Below, piece after piece: positions 1 through 8,890 of a DNA stretch of 64,000 nt (its first letter is position 1; every line of letters starts with the position of its first letter). Under the pieces are notes generated by a model. The model saw only the letters and a list, made by a program, of their open reading frames with translations. It had not been told where the DNA came from and did no database searches. The DNA is from Chrysemys picta bellii (Eukaryota), in assembly GCF_011386835.1 (NCBI RefSeq), contig NC_088807.1:26846001-26910000 (forward strand), given 5' to 3'. Made by a program: the position numbers and the translations under genes.

Positions 1-122
1 CCAGGGGCTGTGCAGGGGGGCTGGGCCAGGCCTCAGGGCTGGGGGGCCATGCGGGGGGCGGGGTGGGGCGGGGCCATGTGTGGCAGGGGGGCCCGGGCCA
101 GACTGACCCCCGGCGCCCCCAG

Positions 123-1944
123 GGCACGCTGCAGAAGTTCGTGGATGACCTGTTCGAGACGCTGTTCAGCACGGCACACCGAGCCAGCGCCCTGCCCCTG
201 CCCATCAAGTACATGTTCGACTTCCTGGACGAGCAGGCGGATCGGCGCCAGATCAGCGACCCCGACGTGCGGCACACCTGGAAGAGCAACTGGTGAGACC
301 CCTGGAGGGGCTCGGGGGCTCTGACCCCCCCCCCCGCCTGCCCCTGCGGTTCTGGGTGAACGTGATCAGGGTGTTGGGGGGGCTGGGGAGGGCCATGGGG
401 GGGCTCGGGGTGCCGGGGGGGTGGGTCTCTGGCACTCTCTGACCCCCATCTCCCCCGCCTGCCCCTGCGGTTCTGGGTGAACGTGATCAGGGTGTTGGGG
501 GGGCTGGGGAGGGCCATGGGGGGGCTCGGGGTGCCGGGGGGGGGTCTCTGGCACTCTCTGACCCCCATCTCCCCTGCCTGCCCCTGCGGTTCTGGGTGAA
601 CGTGATCAGGGTGTTGGGGGGGTGGGGAGGGCCATGGGGGGGCTCGGGGTGCCGGGGGGGTGGGTCTCTGGCACTCTCTGACCCCCATCTCCCCAGCCTG
701 CCCCTGCGGTTCTGGGTGAACGTGATCAAGAACCCGCAGTTCGTGTTCGACGTGCACAAGAGCAGCATCACGGACGCGTGTCTCTCCGTGGTGGCCCAGA
801 CGTTCATGGACTCATGTTCCACGTCGCCCCAGCGCCTGGGCAAGGACTCGCCCTCCACCAAACTGCTCTATGCCAAGGACCTGCCCGGCTACCGCGGCTG
901 GGTGGAGCGGTGAGTGGGGGGAGCCAGGCAGGGGGCAGAGTGAGGGGGCAGCGAGAGCTGGGGGCACACTGCAGGGCAGAGTGGGGGGCAGGGGAGGGGC
1001 TGTGATGAGCAGGAGGGTTGGGGGGAGTGGCCGACGCAGGGGGCTCCCTCATGGGGGGAGAGGTGGGGGAGGGGCATCAGGATACAGGGGTTGGGGGGTA
1101 GAAGGGGTAACAGGGCCGTGGGGGGACAGTGAGGGGAGGGGCGCCGGGATGCGGGGGGAGGGAGTAACGGGGCCGTGGGGGGAAAGAGCAATGGGGGGAG
1201 GTGACCCTGCCCCCCCTCACCTCTGCCCCCCAGGTACTACCGGGACATCGCCAGGATGGCGCCCATCAGCGATCAAGACATGGACGCCTACCTCGGGGAG
1301 CAGTCGCGGCTCCACGCCGGGGAGTTCAACACCCTGGGGGCGCTGGGCGAGCTCTACCAGTACGTGGGGCGCTACCGCCAGGAGGTGAGACCCGCCAACC
1401 CCGCCCAGCGCTGGAGGAGCCCCCGCCCCACTGTCCCACCAATCCTGCCTGGCGCTGGGCAAGTCCCCACCCCACTGCCCACCAGTTCCCCCTGCTCCCC
1501 CTGCCCCCCAGTCCCACCCGCAGCCCCAGACCCGCAGCCCCTCCCAGCCCGGCCCTGGGCTCCCCTGCTCTGCCAGTGCCCCTCACTCCCGACCCGCAGC
1601 CCCTGCCCTCCCAGCCCCGCCAGCGCCCCTCAGTCCCCACCCCACTGCCCCCAGTTCCCCCTGCTCCCCCTGTCCCACTGCCCCCCAGTTCCCACTGCCC
1701 CCCCGCCCCCCAGTCCCACCAACCCCGCCAGGTGCTGGGCGAGTCCCCACCCCACTGCTCCCCCCGCCCGGCGCTGGGCGAGCTCTGCCAGCACACGGGA
1801 CGGGAGGTGAGACCCCCCCGGTGCCCCGACCCTGCCCCTCGCCCGCAGGTGCTGACGGCGCTGGAGCGGGACGGGAGCTGCCGGAAGCAGCGGCTGCGCC
1901 AGCGACTGGAGCAGGTCATCGCCTTGGTCTCCACCAACAGCTGA
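123..1944 (+). CDS. PLXNA3: Plexin-A3, 3' partial (last four coding exons, intracellular RasGAP C-terminus)
   Basis: Exons 123-292, 697-909, 1234-1384, 1849-1944 (TGA), all GT-AG and in frame. They give [19 protein letters not shown]...[33 protein letters not shown]...[21 protein letters not shown]...[12 protein letters not shown], matching the PLXNA3 C-terminus as recalled. Candidate polyA signal ATTAAA at 2780-2785. Confidence 0.95.
300..696. repeat. ~120-bp intronic tandem repeat containing copies of the next exon's 5' end
   Basis: Three copies of CCTGCCCCTGCGGTTCTGGGTGAACGTGATCA start at 337, 458 and 577; the true exon starts at 697. Confidence 0.95.
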
Positions 1945-3379: not shown

Positions 3380-4090
3380 ATTCCCCTCACTCCCGACCCG
3401 CAGCCCCTGCCAGCCCGGCCCTGGACCCCCCCGACCCTCACTCCTGACCCGCAGCCCCTACCAGCCCGGCCCTGGGCTCCCCAGCCCTGCCGGTGCCCCT
3501 CACTCCCAACCCGCAGCCCCTGCCCCCCAGCCCTGGACCCCCCTGACCCTCACTCCCGACCCGCAGCCCCTGCCCCCCAGCCCCGCCGGCGCCCCTCACT
3601 CCCGACCCGCAGCCCCTGCCAGCCCGGCCCTGGGCTCCCCAGCCCTGCTGGCGCCCCTCACTCCCAACCCGCAGCCCCTGCCCCCCAGCCCTGGACCCCC
3701 CCTGACCCTCACTCCCGACCTGCAGCCCCTGCCCCCCAGCCCAGCCCCCCAGCCCCGCCGGCGCCCCTCTCTCCTGACCCGCAGCCCCTGCCAGCCCGGC
3801 CCTGGACCCCCCCGACCCTCACTCCTGACCCGCAGCCCCTGCCCCCCAGCCCTGGACCCCCCCGACCCTCACTCCCGACCCGCAGCCCCTGCCCCCCAGC
3901 CCCGCCGGTGCCCCTCACTCCCGACCCGCAGCCCCTGCCAGCCCAGCCCTGCCCCCCCCCCAGCCCTGCCGGTGCCCCTCACTCCCGACCCGCAGCCCCC
4001 TGCCAGCCCAGCCCTGCCCCCCCCCCCCAGCCCTGCCGGTGCCCCTCACTCCCGACCCGCAGCCCCTGCCAGCCCGGCCCTGGGCTCCCC
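3380..4090. repeat. C-rich minisatellite (CCCTCACTCCCGACCCGCAGCCCCTGCC-type units)
   Basis: Many degenerate tandem units. The same family occurs at ~1520-1630 and, reverse-complemented, at ~33790-33930. Confidence 0.9.
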
Positions 4091-4268
4091 CTGGAGCTTG
4101 CACCATCTGTGCCTGTTGATTTTTAATTATTCATCTGCTCTCCGGCCAGGCAGCTGATGGGAGGTTAATGGACAGAGGTGGGGGAGGGGGAGGGGGAGCG
4201 CCCCTGGGACCCCCCCACACCTGTCAGCTGCAGCTGGAGCTGGCTAACCAGGCCCCTGCTAAGCAGGG

Positions 4269-4733
4269 TGTCACGGCGTATTGGGGAACTCAGGGCCCTG
4301 CACCCCCGGCTTCCTGCGATTCACCATGACTCTCAGCCAGCCAGTAAAGCAGAAGGTTTATTTGGATGACAGGAATACAGTCCAAGACAGGTCTTGCAGG
4401 CGCAGACAACAGGACCCCCCCAGTTAAGTCCAGCTTGGGGTCCCAGGGCATTCCAGCCCACCCCCCTTGGGGGGGGGGTCAGAGCCATCTCTGTCTCCCA
4501 GCCATCTCTCCAGCTCGCTTCCAGCCCTCTCCCTTCAGCGACCCCTCCCACAGCCTTTGTTCAGTTTCCCGGGCCCCGGACTCACCTGACCTCCAACCCC
4601 CTCCTGGGTTCTCATGTTACAAGCTCAGGTATGTTCCCTCGGGCCGACTCCCATCCCCCGATGCAGACCATCCTAGTCACACTCCCCTGTCAGCATTCCC
4701 ACACCCCAGCAAGAACAGTCCCAGTTCGTCACA
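4269..4733 (-). repeat. 3' LTR of the Gmr1-like element
   Basis: TGTCAC...GTCACA termini; AATAAA on the minus strand at 4357-4362; preceded on the minus strand by the PPT AAGGGGGGGAGAGA. Confidence 0.95.
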
Positions 4734-4799
4734 TCTCTCCCCCCTTCGAGACCGAACTGAGCAGGGTCACTTTAGCCAGTGACCTGGGGAAGTTCGAAC

Positions 4800-7586
4800 C
4801 TACCCCCGTTCCCATGGATGCCCCCGCATCCCTCCCATTCCTTGGTGAGAATTACACCAGGCCCCTCCAGTTTCACGCCCCCCCTTGGGTTGGGGGTGCT
4901 TGATGGCACTCGCAGTTCGCATGTGGGAAGGTTTATGCGGCCTGTGCCCTTTTCCCACCCCCATACCTCTGGGGCTCCAACTGGGCTGTGGTCTTCTCCC
5001 AGCGCTCCAGTCTGGAGGTCTGTGCTTTGGGCTCTCTTGGTTTAGAGCCGCCCTTTTTACCTTGGTCACCCTCCGAAAAGGCTCCTCTATGCTGGGCAAG
5101 GGTCCTAAAGCTGTTTTCCCCTTGTCCCAGGCCTTCCTCCCCCTCTGACAGGGGTCACAGGATCCGCAGTACTGTCGGACAGTAACAAAGACCCCAGGCC
5201 AGTAAAAGCTCCGTAGCAGCCTCTGCTGGGTACGCCAGGTTCCCTGGTGCCCTGAGAGGGGAATGTCATGGGCCCGGCACAGCAGCTGGCGGCGATACTT
5301 CTGGGGTACCACCAGCTGCCTCCTGATCCCCCCTGACTCCATTTTCCCTGGGGGAGCCCATTCTCGGTACAGGAACCCCTTCTCCCACAGGAACCTTTTC
5401 CGGCCACCTCGTCCCATGGTCTGTACCGCATTGAGGTCGGCCAGGTCCCTTATCTTCCGCAAGGAGGGGTCTCTCTGTAGCTCGGCCTGGAACTCAGCAG
5501 CTGGGACGGGGATGGCCACCTGCTCTTTCTCGCCCGCTGGGTCCGAAGCTGCAGCCTCCCTGAGCCGCGTCCCTGGGCGTTCCCTCCCCACCAGGTTAGG
5601 GTCCTGCGCCTCAGGCAAGGCACCCCCCCCAAGGCCAGGGCGCAGTGCCCCTCGCCGGCTCTGACCGCGGGTCACAACTAAGGCGGTCTGGGGGCTGCTT
5701 GGCCAGTCCTCTAGGTCCCCCCCCATCAACACCTCAGTGGGCAAATGGTGGTGCACTCCCACGTCCTTGGGGCCCTCCTTGGCCCCCCATTTCAGGTGTA
5801 CCCTCGCTACGGGAACCTTAAATGGGGTCCCGCCCACCCCGGTCAGGGTCAGGAAGGTGTTGGGCACCACCCGATCTGGGGCCACCACCTCGGGCCGGGC
5901 CAGTGTCACCTCTGCGCCCGTGTCCCAGTATCCATAAACTTTCTTCCCATCCACCTCCAGGGGAACAAGGCACTCGCTCCGCAGGGACAGCCCCGCGCCA
6001 ACCCTGTAAACGGAGAACTTTGAATCCGGAGCATCTGGCCCTCCAGAGAAGCTGGCCGGGGGCCCTTCTCTCTCTTGAGCAGTTGATAAGCTGCCAGCCC
6101 CTCTTGCGTGGGAAGCCTGCCCCTCGTCCGTCTGGGCCTCTACCAAGTTAACCCGGTGCGGGTTCGGTCTGCTCAGTCTGTCCTTGAGCTTGGGGCACTG
6201 GGCCCGAATGTGGCCTCTTCGGCCGCAGTAATAGCAGCTCAGGTCCCGTGGGTCCCCTCGAGCCGGTCGGTTGTCCCTGATGCTGGGCCTTCCCCGTGGG
6301 AGGGGATCCCCCATATTCCCCCTTTGGGAGGTCCCAGGGTGACTCTCTCTCTGCATCGCGGCGGGCCTGTTCCTTTGGGGCTCCTCCCTGCCACCCCCTG
6401 ACCGGCTCTTTACAAACTCATCAGCCAGCTGCCCGGCGTGTCGCGGGTTCTCTGGCTTTCTGTCCACCAACCACAGCCTCAGGTCGGATGGGCACCGCCC
6501 ATACAGTTGCTCCAGTACCAGCAGTTTAATCAGGTCCTCCTTCGTCTGGGCCCCACCAGCCCACTTGCTGGCGTATCTTTCCATGCGGACGGCTAGTTGC
6601 AAATAGGAGATCTCAGGGGTTTTATCTTGACTCCGGAACCTTTCCCGGTACATCTCAGGAGTCAGCCCAAACTCTCGTAGCAGGGCCTTTTTGAATAGTT
6701 CGTAGTCCCCTTTCTCTGCCTCTCCCAGTTGGCGGTACAATGCCACGGATTTGGGGTCCAGTAAGGGGGTAAGGACCCGGAGTCTGTCCGCGGGATCAAC
6801 CCGGTGCAGCTCGCAGGCCGTCTCAAAGGCCTCCAGGAAGTCATCCATGTCCTCCCCCTCCTTGTATGGGGCCATGATGCACTTATCAAAGCTCCGTGCA
6901 GTCCTGGGTCCCCCCTCACTCACCGCAGCCGGGGGTTCGCTGCCCTTCAATCTCGCCAGTTCCAGGTCATGCTGACGCTGTCTCTCATTCTCCTGTCTCT
7001 GTCTCTCATTCTCCTCCCGTTCACGCTGATGCTGTCTCTCTTTCTCCTCCCGTTCACGCTGATGCTGTCTCTCATTCTCCTCCCGTTCATGCTGTCTCTG
7101 TCTCTCTTCACGCTGATGCTGTCTCTCTTTCTCCTCCCGTTCATGCTGTCTCTGTCGTTCACGATCCTCCAGCTCTCTCAGTTTTAGCTCTTTCTCCCAT
7201 TCCAGCCAATTCCGCTCCCCGGATGCCGAACGTCGCCGGGAGGATCCTCTGCTGGCCGGCGGGCTTCGCCGGGGGGACCCCCTGCTGGCCGGGGGGGTCA
7301 CGGCGCCTTCGGTATTTGCTGGGCTCCTCCCCACCCTTCCCCTAGGCATAGGAAGGAGGGGTCTCGGGAAGCCCTCAGCAGCCGGCTGACCACTCCCAGC
7401 TGGGACAGACACTGGTGCCTGCGCTGCATTTGCCAGGCTGCTTCCCTGAGACACAGGGATCAGTTCATTCGCGCGATCTTCCGCCTCCAGCCGGGCAATG
7501 AGCTGTTCTTTGGTGAGCCTCCCAATGCGCAGCTGCCTCTGCTTGCACAGCTCCACCAGGTCGCTCTTAAGCCGCTTGGCATACAT
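4800..7586 (-). CDS. Retrotransposon Gag-protease-truncated integrase polyprotein (928 aa from the ATG at 7586)
   Basis: SCAN-like capsid segment (FRSQDKTPE...KW...TKEDLIKLLVLEQL...LRLWLVDRKP...AGQLADEF, ~6410-6660). CCHC knuckle CYYCGRRGHIRAQC (6195-6236). Aspartic protease DTGA (~5914-5926). Integrase HHCC AHD...GHQG...CGSCDPC (~5145-5275), then LPSIEEPFRRV. No DDE core, YxDD RT or RNase H motifs. Confidence 0.9.
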   Translation of the reverse strand: MYAKRLKSDLVELCKQRQLRIGRLTKEQLIARLEAEDRANELIPVSQGSSLANAAQAPVSVPAGSGQPAAEGFPRPLLPMPRGRVGRSPANTEGAVTPPASRGSPRRSPPASRGSSRRRSASGERNWLEWEKELKLRELEDRERQRQHEREEKERQHQREERQRQHEREENERQHQREREEKERQHQREREENERQRQENERQRQHDLELARLKGSEPPAAVSEGGPRTARSFDKCIMAPYKEGEDMDDFLEAFETACELHRVDPADRLRVLTPLLDPKSVALYRQLGEAEKGDYELFKKALLREFGLTPEMYRERFRSQDKTPEISYLQLAVRMERYASKWAGGAQTKEDLIKLLVLEQLYGRCPSDLRLWLVDRKPENPRHAGQLADEFVKSRSGGGREEPQRNRPAAMQRESHPGTSQRGNMGDPLPRGRPSIRDNRPARGDPRDLSCYYCGRRGHIRAQCPKLKDRLSRPNPHRVNLVEAQTDEGQASHARGAGSLSTAQEREGPPASFSGGPDAPDSKFSVYRVGAGLSLRSECLVPLEVDGKKVYGYWDTGAEVTLARPEVVAPDRVVPNTFLTLTGVGGTPFKVPVARVHLKWGAKEGPKDVGVHHHLPTEVLMGGDLEDWPSSPQTALVVTRGQSRRGALRPGLGGGALPEAQDPNLVGRERPGTRLREAAASDPAGEKEQVAIPVPAAEFQAELQRDPSLRKIRDLADLNAVQTMGRGGRKRFLWEKGFLYREWAPPGKMESGGIRRQLVVPQKYRRQLLCRAHDIPLSGHQGTWRTQQRLLRSFYWPGVFVTVRQYCGSCDPCQRGRKAWDKGKTALGPLPSIEEPFRRVTKVKRAALNQESPKHRPPDWSAGRRPQPSWSPRGMGVGKGHRPHKPSHMRTASAIKHPQPKGGRETGGAWCNSHQGMGGMRGHPWERG

Positions 7587-7906
7587 CTTCCTGCTGGCCA
7601 CTCACCGGCCTGTGTGCTCACAGCTCCCCACAGTTCCCAGGGGGACCCCTAGTGTGCCAGCCCTTCTCGAGGTCACCACCTCTCTGCCAGGGTCGAGCTG
7701 CAGACTCCTCCGCCCCTGGGACCACTCGCTGCGATCCCCCCGGGGGACCCTGTTACTGCAAAAGTCCTTCTCGCTGGTCACACACTCCCAGGGGTAATAA
7801 CCGTCTCTCTCTCACTCTTCAGCACGCCTGGTCCCCGTCAATCCCCCTTCGTTTTACTGCTCCCCAGTCACTTACTGCAGGAAGCGCCGTCCACGGGGTG
7901 CAGTAG

Positions 7907-7924
7907 ATCCCACCGCTGCCACCA
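7907..7924 (-). promoter_or_regulatory. Primer-binding site complementary to the tRNA-Leu(AAG/TAG) 3' end
   Basis: Minus strand reads TGGTGGCAGCGGTGGGAT, 2 nt inside the 5' LTR. This complements ...AUCCCACCGCUGCCACCA of vertebrate tRNA-Leu (recalled). Confidence 0.85.
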
Positions 7925-7926
7925 GT

Positions 7927-8391
7927 TGTCACGGCGTATTGGGGAACTCAGGGCCCTGCACCCCCGGCTTCCTGCGATTCACCATGACTCTCAGCCAGCC
8001 AGTAAAGCAGAAGGTTTATTTGGATGACAGGAATACAGTCCAAGACAGGTCTTGCAGGCGCAGACAACAGGACCCCCCCAGTTAAGTCCAGCTTGGGGTC
8101 CCAGGGCATTCCAGCCCACCCCCCTTGGGGGGGGGGTCAGAGCCATCTCTGTCTCCCAGCCATCTCTCCAGCTCGCTTCCAGCCCTCTCCCTTCAGCGAC
8201 CCCTCCCACAGCCTTTGTTCAGTTTCCCGGGCCCCGGACTCACCTGACCTCCAACCCCCTCCTGGGTTCTCATGTTACAAGCTCAGGTATGTTCCCTCGG
8301 GCCGACTCCCATCCCCCGATGCAGACCATCCTAGTCACACTCCCCTGTCAGCATTCCCACACCCCAGCAAGAACAGTCCCAGTTCGTCACA
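7927..8391 (-). repeat. 5' LTR of the Gmr1-like element
   Basis: Apparently identical to 4269-4733; followed on the minus strand by the PBS. Confidence 0.95.
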
Positions 8392-8435
8392 CAGGGAAAG
8401 CCCAGTTTACAGTTTGGATGGGAGACCGGGCAGCA

Positions 8436-8890
8436 CAGCGCCCCCTGCTGCCCGGCCCTGCCTGTCAGGGGAGAGTGTCCCCTGCCCAGCACCCCCACCC
8501 CGCTCCCTGCCCCACGGCGCCCCCCATAGCCCCCAGTCTTGCCTGCCAAGGGAGAGCACCCCTGCCCACCCCTCCACCCCACTCCCTGCCCCATGGTGCC
8601 CCCCACAGCCCCAGTCTTGCCTGCCAAGGGAGAGCACCCCTGCCCACCCCTCCACCCCACTCCCTGCCCCACACCCAGCTCTGCCTGCCAGGGGAGAGAA
8701 TCCCCTGCCCAGCCCCCTGCCCCACAGCACCCCTTAGTGTCCGGCCCTGACTGCCAGGGGAGAGCACCCCCTGCCCCAGACCACCCACCCTGCTGCCCAC
8801 CCCACGGCACCCCCTAGTGCCCAGTCCTACCTACCAGGAGAGAGCACCCTCTGCCCAGCCCCCTGCCCCACTCCCTGTCCCATGGCACCC
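8436..8890. repeat. C-rich tandem repeat (~65-bp units) carrying CTCF-like motifs
   Basis: Units like CCCAGTCTTGCCTGCCAAGGGAGAGCACCCCTGCCCACCCCTCCACCCC. CTCF-like cores at 8436-8454, 8725-8743 and 8805-8823. Confidence 0.75.

What the first reader, a model, noticed from the sequence alone, without database searches (positions are those of the whole stretch)
4264..8396. Very young non-autonomous Gmr1-like LTR element that kept Gag-protease open but lacks RT, RNase H and the integrase core
Seen: apparently identical 465-bp LTRs, 5-bp TSD CAGGG, tRNA-Leu PBS, PPT, and one uninterrupted 928-aa ORF. The ORF runs Gag-PR-integrase HHCC and leaves recognisable homology right after LPSIEEPFRRV, ending 66 nt before the 3' LTR. 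Established: integrase directly after protease is the hallmark of Gmr1-like Ty3/Gypsy elements (Goodwin & Poulter 2002). Inference: identical LTRs mean this internally deleted form (or its immediate parent) transposed recently, borrowing RT/IN in trans. An intact ORF across the deletion suggests the family supplies its own Gag/PR to package its RNA, a semi-autonomous strategy. It may be polymorphic in the population.
Basis: partly seen in the sequence, partly recalled or inferred. Interest (0 to 1): 0.75.

Follow-up and report, generated by a model that had tools for sequence, protein, structure and literature searches.

The report
Turtle jumping gene missing its copying enzymes
This is a recently inserted copy of an old, multi-copy turtle retrotransposon lineage that encodes only its shell protein and protease and probably borrows its copying enzymes from full-length relatives; such a lifestyle is described in wheat and mice, but I found no description of it for this animal family.

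Summary
On the minus strand at 4264-8396 lies a complete LTR element. Its two 465-bp LTRs are identical and it has a CAGGG target duplication, an 18-nt primer site, a polypurine tract and one open 928-codon frame.

The frame reads Gag (SCAN-type capsid, zinc knuckle), a retropepsin-fold protease and the integrase zinc-binding domain. It then runs into an 88-aa tail predicted to be disordered. No integrase core, RT or RNase H remains in any frame.

It is not a one-off deletion. At least 16 near-full-length painted-turtle proteins share the same junction and tail. So do two Malaclemys fragments and one Gopherus protein. The tail also occurs in Macrochelys and Caretta proteins, so the lineage is old.

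It is not a clean deletion either: about 2.3 kb of pol is replaced by 268 nt of unknown origin.

Gag-protease is 96-100% identical to intact full-length painted-turtle elements. The integrase remnant is only 60-76% identical to them. Deleted copies carry at least three different Gag/protease mosaics, which points to repeated recombination with the partner.

"Semi-autonomous" is plausible but unproven.

The scan has noted this family several times elsewhere in this genome. Reads and DNA of other copies were unavailable, so polymorphism, expression and dN/dS were not tested.

The parts
4264..4268 (.). Target-site duplication CAGGG (3' side of the element)
4269..4733 (-). 3' LTR, 465 bp, TG...CA ends; AATAAA at 4362-4357 in element sense
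   Evidence: 465/465 identical to the other LTR; AATAAA read
4734..4747 (-). Polypurine tract GAAGGGGGGAGAGA, directly abutting the 3' LTR
   Evidence: Read. The same stretch is encoded as ...LEGGRDVT at the end of full-length pol proteins
4727..4795 (-). Remnant of the extreme 3' end of pol (full-length residues 1586-1608), in a different frame from the main ORF. It is closed by TAA at 4774-4772, where full-length pol reads on
   Evidence: tblastn 91% over 23 aa; C-termini compared
4796..5063 (-). 268-nt filler that replaces pol residues 809-1585 and encodes the tail. Origin unknown
   Evidence: No match to pol in any frame or elsewhere in the window. Pfam finds nothing. An exhaustive protein search finds only turtle element-derived proteins. 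Predicted disordered
4800..7586 (-). Single ORF of 928 codons plus TAG: Gag, protease, integrase N-terminal domain, tail
5112..5519 (-). Integrase N-terminal region (ORF aa 690-825), including the HHCC zinc-binding domain (Pfam hit at about 5136-5309). H, H, C and C are all present
   Evidence: Pfam Integrase_H2C2 E 1e-17; AlphaFold pLDDT 80-97; HHCC checked
5688..6026 (-). Retropepsin-type protease; DTG at 5924-5916
   Evidence: AlphaFold core pLDDT 82-95. Foldseek top hits are HIV-1 PR and the DDI1 retropepsin domain, probability 1.0. ESM Atlas hits are all retropepsin families. Weak PDB sequence hits to retroviral proteases
6180..6236 (-). Nucleocapsid CCHC zinc knuckle
   Evidence: Pfam zf-CCHC
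6402..6659 (-). Capsid C-terminal domain of SCAN type
   Evidence: Pfam SCAN E 3e-11 to 3e-12
6942..7217 (-). E/R/Q-rich part of Gag built from 27/33/54-nt tandem units; varies in length between copies
7587..7906 (-). 5' untranslated leader
7907..7924 (-). Primer binding site TGGTGGCAGCGGTGGGAT, two bases after the 5' LTR
   Evidence: Read. The match to the tRNA-Leu 3' end is recalled, not tested
7927..8391 (-). 5' LTR, 465 bp
8392..8396 (.). Target-site duplication CAGGG (5' side of the element)

Best explanation
This is a recently integrated copy of an old non-autonomous branch of the turtle Gmr1-like (Ty3/gypsy-type) retrotransposons.

Shown:
- The element has every cis part needed for reverse transcription and integration: LTRs, primer site, polypurine tract and target duplication.
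- Its one ORF encodes Gag, a protease, the integrase zinc domain and a tail predicted to be disordered. It encodes no integrase core, RT or RNase H.
- The same junction and tail recur in many copies in the painted turtle and in other turtle families.
- Intact full-length elements with 96-100% identical Gag-protease exist in the painted turtle.
- Deleted copies are mosaics of at least two Gag/protease lineages.

Inferred:
- Its RNA is packaged into particles together with RNA of the full-length partner, and is copied and inserted by the partner's RT and integrase.
- Template switching between co-packaged RNAs repeatedly replaces its Gag-protease half with the partner's version.
- The 3' half, which has no donor in the partner, drifts but stays readable almost to the 3' LTR.

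Open: whether its own Gag/protease is needed for its spread.
For: - Structure.
- Domains.
- Missing enzymes: full-length P0004 aligns over residues 1-808 and 1586-1608 only.
- Family status: 20 database proteins carry the ...PF(Q/R)RVA|KVKR(A/G)AL... junction. They are 16 near-full-length (871-930 aa) and one 705-aa Chrysemys protein, two Malaclemys fragments and Gopherus P0016, whose junction is more diverged. Macrochelys P0097 and Caretta P0099 carry the tail.
- Partner: the P0004 cluster has 29 members, including at least eight painted-turtle ORFs of 1552-1644 aa, with SCAN, CCHC, H2C2, rve, SH3, RVT_1 and RNase H in that order.
- Mosaicism: Gag-PR is 96-100% identical to the partner, while residues 641-842 are 60-76% identical to the partner and 95-99% identical among deleted copies. 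There are three recombinant types.
- Tree: in a tree of that 3' segment the deleted forms plus Gopherus P0016 form their own clade, support 95/87.
- Shared cis ends: the partner's pol C-terminus encodes the same polypurine tract and the first 7 nt of the LTR.
- Youth: 0 differences in 465 bp of LTR.
Against: - No DNA of other copies and no sequencing reads could be obtained. Copy number, LTR similarity between deleted and full-length forms, ORF status of unannotated copies, dN/dS, insertion polymorphism and expression are therefore untested.
- The protein set comes from gene annotation, which favours open frames.
- Mobilisation in trans is inferred, not observed.
- From the roughly 20 nt visible through protein C-termini, the partner's LTR looks related to this LTR but not identical.
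- In Macrochelys and Caretta only 2-4 residues upstream of the junction are visible, inside gene models that may be spliced. There the tail is secure but the junction less so.
Confidence: 0.8

Rival explanations
1. Same element and same trans-mobilisation, but the Gag-protease protein of the deleted form has no role of its own. The gag-PR half would be retained because it holds cis-acting RNA signals and is constantly overwritten from the partner by recombination. The rest of the frame would be kept open only because an RNA translated nearly to its 3' end survives better, for example by avoiding decay triggered by a long untranslated tail.
For: - Gag-PR segments of deleted copies are 96-100% identical to the partner, and there are at least three crossover patterns.
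- 22 of the 129 positions that never vary in 17 full-length proteins are changed in this copy's integrase remnant. This shows relaxed protein constraint, yet there is no stop and no indel against full-length proteins.
- In simulation, a stop-free path has probability 0.065-0.017 for 40-57 residue changes.
- The tail is predicted disordered. Its last third is read in different frames in different copies, yet every frame ends within about 70 nt of the LTR.
- An earlier scan note on this family (s1-314114) reached a similar reading.
Against: - The annotated proteins are biased toward open frames.
- The simulation is rough: substitutions only, run forward from the present sequence.
- There are no synonymous-site data.
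- Wheat Gag-Pro-only families are read by their authors as contributors of Gag (PMC9744471).
Confidence: 0.35
2. The deletion is private to this locus and arose after insertion of a full-length element.
For: None beyond its being the default for a single deleted copy.
Against: The identical junction and tail occur in 20 other annotated proteins from three genera, and the tail occurs in two more genera.
Confidence: 0.01
3. The perfect LTR identity is an artefact (assembly collapse) or results from gene conversion between the LTRs, so the copy is older than it looks.
For: It could not be checked with reads. The locus lies between minisatellites in GC-rich DNA, which is hard to assemble.
Against: - The target duplication is intact and the flanks on the two sides differ.
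- The ORF is intact.
- Gag-PR is 96-100% identical to other young copies.
- Earlier scan notes report other copies with identical LTRs (unverified).
Confidence: 0.05
4. It is a domesticated host gene derived from Gag-protease, not a mobile element.
For: RefSeq lists the copies as 'uncharacterized protein LOC...' genes, and UniRef names the Gopherus one 'Gypsy retrotransposon integrase-like protein 1'.
Against: - This copy has LTRs, a primer site, a polypurine tract and a target duplication.
- Many paralogous copies lie on different chromosomes.
- It sits downstream of PLXNA3 in repeat-rich DNA.
Confidence: 0.02

Closest known systems
Wheat RLG_Sabrina_SA and RLG_WHAM, 'semi-autonomous' Gypsy elements, with autonomous RLG_Wilma (Wicker et al. 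2021, PMC9744471, read)
   Same: High-copy LTR retrotransposon lineages whose only intact ORF is Gag plus protease. RT and integrase are absent. They co-evolve with an autonomous partner and are suggested to contribute Gag.
   Different: Those are plant elements with the usual PR-RT-RH-IN order. Here the Gmr1-type order leaves the integrase zinc domain attached, a 268-nt foreign stretch forms a tail, and Gag-PR is demonstrably exchanged with the partner. Copy number here is unknown.
Mouse IAP I-delta-1 subtype (PMC1331978, read)
   Same: A vertebrate LTR element with a fixed internal deletion that fuses reading frames. It needs full-length elements in trans yet accounts for most new insertions.
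   Different: I-delta-1 is a 1.9-kb gag-pol deletion in a betaretrovirus-like ERV and is described there as recent. The turtle lineage lacks all of RT, RNase H and the integrase core, and is shared by several turtle families.
[quoted passage not shown]
   Same: SCAN-type capsid, integrase directly after protease, single gag-pol frame. The full-length partner P0004 fits this description.
   Different: Those descriptions concern autonomous elements. The seven full-text searches I ran turned up no paper describing a deleted Gag-PR-only branch.
Barley BARE2 with BARE1 (as summarised in PMC9744471)
   Same: A partner-dependent LTR retrotransposon pair within one family.
   Different: The division of labour is the opposite: BARE2 has lost gag and keeps pol.

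Membership tests
LTR retrotransposon (structural definition) | Two direct LTRs with TG...CA ends, flanked by a short target-site duplication | tested here: met
   465/465 identical LTRs, TG...CA ends, 5-bp CAGGG on both sides
LTR retrotransposon (structural definition) | Primer binding site next to the 5' LTR and polypurine tract next to the 3' LTR | tested here: met
   An 18-nt TGG... site two bases after the 5' LTR and a 14-nt purine run abutting the 3' LTR. The tRNA-Leu assignment is recalled only
Gmr1-like Ty3/gypsy elements | Integrase lies directly downstream of protease and upstream of RT | tested here: met
   Here the H2C2 domain follows the protease. In the full-length relative P0004 the order is H2C2 727-783, rve 802-899, RVT_1 1208-1367, RNase H 1432-1561
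Gmr1-like Ty3/gypsy elements | Capsid C-terminal domain of SCAN type | tested here: met
   Pfam SCAN above the gathering score
Gmr1-like Ty3/gypsy elements | RT groups with reference Gmr1 elements in a phylogeny | not tested
   This copy has no RT. The partner's RT was not placed against reference Gmr1 sequences
Non-autonomous (semi-autonomous) LTR retrotransposon family | Lacks RT, RNase H and the integrase catalytic core | tested here: met
   tblastn of a full-length polyprotein in all six frames; Pfam
Non-autonomous (semi-autonomous) LTR retrotransposon family | The same deletion junction in many independent copies | tested here: met
   20 annotated proteins with the same junction and tail, encoded on at least nine differently sized contigs, in Chrysemys, Malaclemys and Gopherus. 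Tested at protein level only
Non-autonomous (semi-autonomous) LTR retrotransposon family | An autonomous partner in the same genome with matching cis ends | tested here: inconclusive
   Intact full-length ORFs with 96-100% identical Gag-PR exist. They share the polypurine tract and the first 7 nt of the LTR, but the next ~15 nt look different. No partner DNA was available
Non-autonomous (semi-autonomous) LTR retrotransposon family | Its own Gag/protease contributes to its mobilisation | not testable with these tools
   Needs dN/dS on copy DNA, expression data or a functional assay
Domesticated Gag-derived host gene | Single orthologous locus without LTRs | tested here: not met
   LTRs and a target duplication are present, and there are many paralogous copies

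The most novel reading that the evidence does not exclude
A Gag-protease-only retrotransposon lineage has survived as a parasite or partner of autonomous Gmr1-like elements since before the pond-turtle/tortoise split, and probably since before the split from sea and snapping turtles. It would do so by two means. First, it repeatedly swaps in the partner's current gag-protease through recombination of co-packaged RNAs. Second, selection keeps its otherwise free-drifting 3' half translatable almost to the LTR. That would point to a general rule that retroelement RNAs must be read to the end to persist.
Probability: 0.3. Interest if true: 0.7.

Novelty: new member of a known kind. Interest (0 to 1): 0.5.

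Why it matters
Gag-protease-only "semi-autonomous" LTR elements are documented in wheat, and deleted trans-dependent ERVs in mice. I found no description of one for Gmr1-like elements, the family that gave vertebrates the SCAN domain.

Turtles appear to hold both partners in a young, intact state. That makes them a natural system for asking three questions:
- How non-autonomous LTR elements track their helpers.
- How often co-packaged RNAs recombine.
- Whether an open frame matters independently of the protein it encodes.

For genome annotation, it also means that dozens of RefSeq "uncharacterized protein LOC..." genes of 870-930 aa in the painted turtle are copies of this element, not host genes.

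Tried and rejected
Copy-number depth, empty alleles, breakpoint read counts and RNA evidence were therefore not obtained.
- dN/dS among copies was impossible without that DNA. I used protein-level comparisons and a rough simulation instead.
- Origin of the 268-nt filler: blastn against the element and the whole window gave only chance matches. Pfam found nothing, and Rfam gave only chance-level hits. An exhaustive phmmer of the tail against 1.84 billion representatives gave three turtle proteins plus one repeat protein (P0098, taken as low-complexity noise; its source was not looked up). Only the main frame of the filler was searched at that scale.
- A spliced-RNA origin (as with the copia gag-PR message, recalled) was considered. 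It has no support, because the sequence after the junction is not the partner's 3' pol sequence.
- A third word search for short fragments added no further species.
- Pfam does not recognise the protease. The protease call rests on motifs, a fold search and the ESM Atlas.
- The SAP-domain hint at the Gag N-terminus is below Pfam's cut-off and is left as a note.
- The alignment tools print a majority line automatically.
Full report
**1. What is at 4264-8396**

The element lies on the minus strand.
- The two repeats at 4269-4733 and 7927-8391 are identical at all 465 positions and end TG...CA. Identity stops exactly at their edges.
- CAGGG sits immediately outside both LTRs, at 4264-4268 and 8392-8396.
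- No other copy of the LTR occurs in the 64-kb window.
- In element sense, the 5' LTR is followed after two bases by an 18-nt site beginning TGG (7924-7907). I recall this as the complement of the 3' end of a tRNA-Leu. That assignment was not tested, because the window holds no tRNA gene.
- A 14-nt purine run (4747-4734) abuts the 3' LTR.
- Each LTR carries AATAAA about 85 nt before its end.
- The single long frame runs from ATG 7586 to TAG 4802-4800. It has 928 codons and ends 66 nt before the 3' LTR. The tool's 933-aa figure starts at an upstream GTG.

**2. What the frame encodes**

- Pfam finds a SCAN domain (capsid C-terminal domain), a CCHC knuckle and the integrase H2C2 zinc domain.
- The stretch between them has no Pfam match, even when scanned alone.
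  - It has DTG and, about 70 residues later, LMGGD.
  - Its best PDB sequence hits are retroviral proteases, at weak E-values.
  - All ten top ESM Atlas clusters are retropepsin families.
  - An AlphaFold model with a confident core (pLDDT 82-95) matches HIV-1 protease and the DDI1 retropepsin domain at Foldseek probability 1.0.
  - I accept it as a protease.
- A model of residues 641-928 folds confidently for 690-825, the integrase N-terminal region. It gives pLDDT 31-42 for 838-928, so the tail is predicted to be disordered.

**3. What is missing, and how**

I ran the 1622-aa painted-turtle protein P0004 against the element in six frames.
- It aligns over residues 1-808 (window 7586-5064, 88% identity).
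- It aligns again only over residues 1586-1608 (window 4795-4727), in another frame.
- P0004 carries H2C2, rve, an SH3-like integrase C-terminus, RVT_1 and RNase H in that order. This is the Gmr1-type arrangement.
- So the integrase core, the integrase C-terminus, RT and RNase H are all absent here.

The 268 nt between the two matches (5063-4796) resemble nothing in pol in any frame, nothing else in the element and nothing else in the window. This is therefore a replacement, not a clean deletion. The filler's main frame supplies the 88-aa tail.

**4. It is a family, and an old one**

- A word search found painted-turtle proteins of 902-919 aa at 88-92% identity, and full-length ones of about 1620 aa.
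- Listing their clusters and scanning for the junction gave 19 proteins with ...PF(Q/R)RVA|KVKR(A/G)AL.... These are 16 Chrysemys picta bellii proteins of 871-930 aa, one of 705 aa, and two Malaclemys fragments. The same tail follows in all but the shortest fragment, where the model ends 17 residues in.
- Gopherus evgoodei P0016 continues from the integrase zinc domain through the same junction into the same tail. It is 73% identical over 71 residues with no gap.
- An exhaustive search with the tail alone found only four representatives among 1.84 billion:
  - P0016.
  - Macrochelys suwanniensis P0097, 64% identical over 85 residues with no gap.
  - Caretta caretta P0099, 67% identical over 42 residues, after which it continues in the filler's second frame.
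  - An unrelated repeat protein.
- In the last two turtle proteins only 2-4 residues upstream of the junction are visible, and the gene models may be spliced. There the filler is secure and the junction only probable.
- Emydids and tortoises belong to Testudinoidea. Snapping and sea turtles belong to Americhelydia (bioRxiv 10.1101/2021.10.14.464421).
- The lineage is therefore at least as old as the emydid-tortoise split, and probably as old as crown Durocryptodira, unless it moved horizontally. I did not verify dates.

The exact protein of this copy is not in the database. Either the locus is unannotated or the window comes from another assembly or individual.

**5. Mosaic structure**

Identity by segment:
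- This copy's Gag-protease (residues 1-640, leaving aside the length-variable repeat region at 124-215) is 97-100% identical to the full-length painted-turtle proteins.
- From about residue 650 onward it drops to 60-64% (linker) and 73-75% (integrase N-terminal domain).
- The same 3' segments are 95-99% identical among all deleted copies, including Malaclemys.
- The switch is abrupt.

Deleted copies fall into three patterns:
- Partner-like through the protease: this copy, six to seven other Chrysemys copies, and Malaclemys P0059.
- Protease only 85-87% identical to the partner but 98% identical to a second Gag lineage (P0009): seven Chrysemys copies and Malaclemys P0056.
- Nucleocapsid only 54-57% identical to the partner but 93% identical to P0009, with a partner-like protease: three copies.

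In a tree of residues 641-842, the deleted forms plus Gopherus P0016 form a clade (support 95/87). That clade is separate from the full-length lineages of sea turtles, Chelonoidis and Chrysemys.

The simplest reading is repeated recombination between deleted and full-length RNAs. For retroelements that implies packaging in the same particle. This is the best indirect evidence available here for mobilisation by the full-length partner.

The partner's pol C-terminus also encodes the same polypurine tract and the first 7 nt of the LTR. Further into the LTR the two appear to differ.

**6. Constraint on the 3' half**

- 129 positions in residues 641-842 are invariant in 17 full-length proteins from six species.
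- This copy differs at 22 of them, every emydid deleted copy differs at 17, and 12 of those departures are shared with Gopherus.
- The integrase remnant has therefore escaped most of the constraint seen in working elements, although H, H, C and C remain in the emydid copies checked.
- Yet there is no stop and no indel against full-length proteins over these 202 codons, and no indel over 85 tail codons against Macrochelys.
- A rough forward simulation gives a probability of 0.065 to 0.017 that this frame stays stop-free over 40-57 residue changes.
- Different copies read the last third of the tail in different frames, yet all end within about 70 nt of the LTR.

This suggests selection for an open frame more than for the encoded protein. 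An earlier scan note on this family (s1-314114) proposed the same. The evidence is weak because the compared proteins come from annotation, which favours open frames.

**7. Age and setting**

- Zero differences between the LTRs means a young insertion.
- With an assumed neutral rate of 0.5-2 x 10^-9 per site per year, the 95% upper bound is about 1.6-6.5 million years.
- The last coding exons of PLXNA3 are recognisable on the plus strand at about 3-293 and 1205-1400.
- The element lies downstream of them, antisense, between two different GC-rich minisatellites.
- The N runs near 10.4 and 11.7 kb were left alone.

**8. Comparison with what is known**

- Gmr1-like elements are reported as abundant in turtles, and as full-length, presumably active lineages there.
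- Seven full-text searches found no description of a deleted Gag-PR-only branch.
- The lifestyle itself is known:
  - Wheat RLG_Sabrina_SA and RLG_WHAM encode only Gag-Pro and are called semi-autonomous partners of RLG_Wilma.
  - Mouse IAP I-delta-1 is a deleted, trans-dependent and highly active ERV subtype.
- I therefore rate this a new member of a known kind. Its added points of interest are its age, the attached integrase zinc domain, the foreign tail and the visible recombination with its helper.
- The scan has already noted this family several times elsewhere in this genome.

**9. Limits**

- As a result no DNA of other copies, no reads and no RNA data were examined.
- Copy number, polymorphism, expression, LTR matching and dN/dS remain open.

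Noticed in passing
window 7464-7586 (minus strand): The first ~40 residues of Gag give a weak SAP-domain hint (Pfam E 0.015, below the cut-off). A chromatin- or DNA-binding motif at a Gag N-terminus would be unusual.
   Followed up: partly
window 6942-7217 (minus strand): The E/R/Q-rich part of Gag is built from 27/33/54-nt tandem units. It is the main source of length differences (871-930 aa) among copies.
   Followed up: partly
window 5063-5055 (minus strand): The junction between the integrase remnant and the filler reads AAG|GTAAAA on the coding strand, which resembles a 5' splice-site consensus. Whether the element's RNA is spliced there is unknown.
   Followed up: no
window 4774-4772 (minus strand): In the old pol frame this copy has TAA right after ...ELPQVTG, and the three deleted-form proteins that read this frame (P0002, Macrochelys P0097, Caretta P0099) also end at ...VTG. 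Full-length pol reads on (Q or H) into the LTR. This looks like a second marker of the lineage.
   Followed up: partly
proteins P0009 and P0013 (Chrysemys picta bellii): A second Gag-protease lineage in the painted turtle supplied the variant nucleocapsid and protease segments found in some deleted copies. Whether it has its own full-length form is unknown.
   Followed up: partly
window 1-1400 (plus strand): The terminal coding exons of PLXNA3 (plexin cytoplasmic domain motifs) are recognisable. The element lies downstream of the gene, in antisense orientation.
   Followed up: partly
window 3384-4082 and 8459-8881: Two different GC-rich minisatellites (units of about 51/110 nt and about 78 nt) flank the insertion. 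Together with the N runs near 10.4 and 11.7 kb, they suggest the region is hard to assemble.
   Followed up: no
RefSeq annotation of Chrysemys picta bellii (proteins P0001-P0003, P0054-P0073): At least 17 'uncharacterized protein LOC...' gene models are copies of this element. Some other models fuse element pieces to host genes, for example those named cyclin-dependent kinase 12-like and dystrobrevin beta.
   Followed up: no
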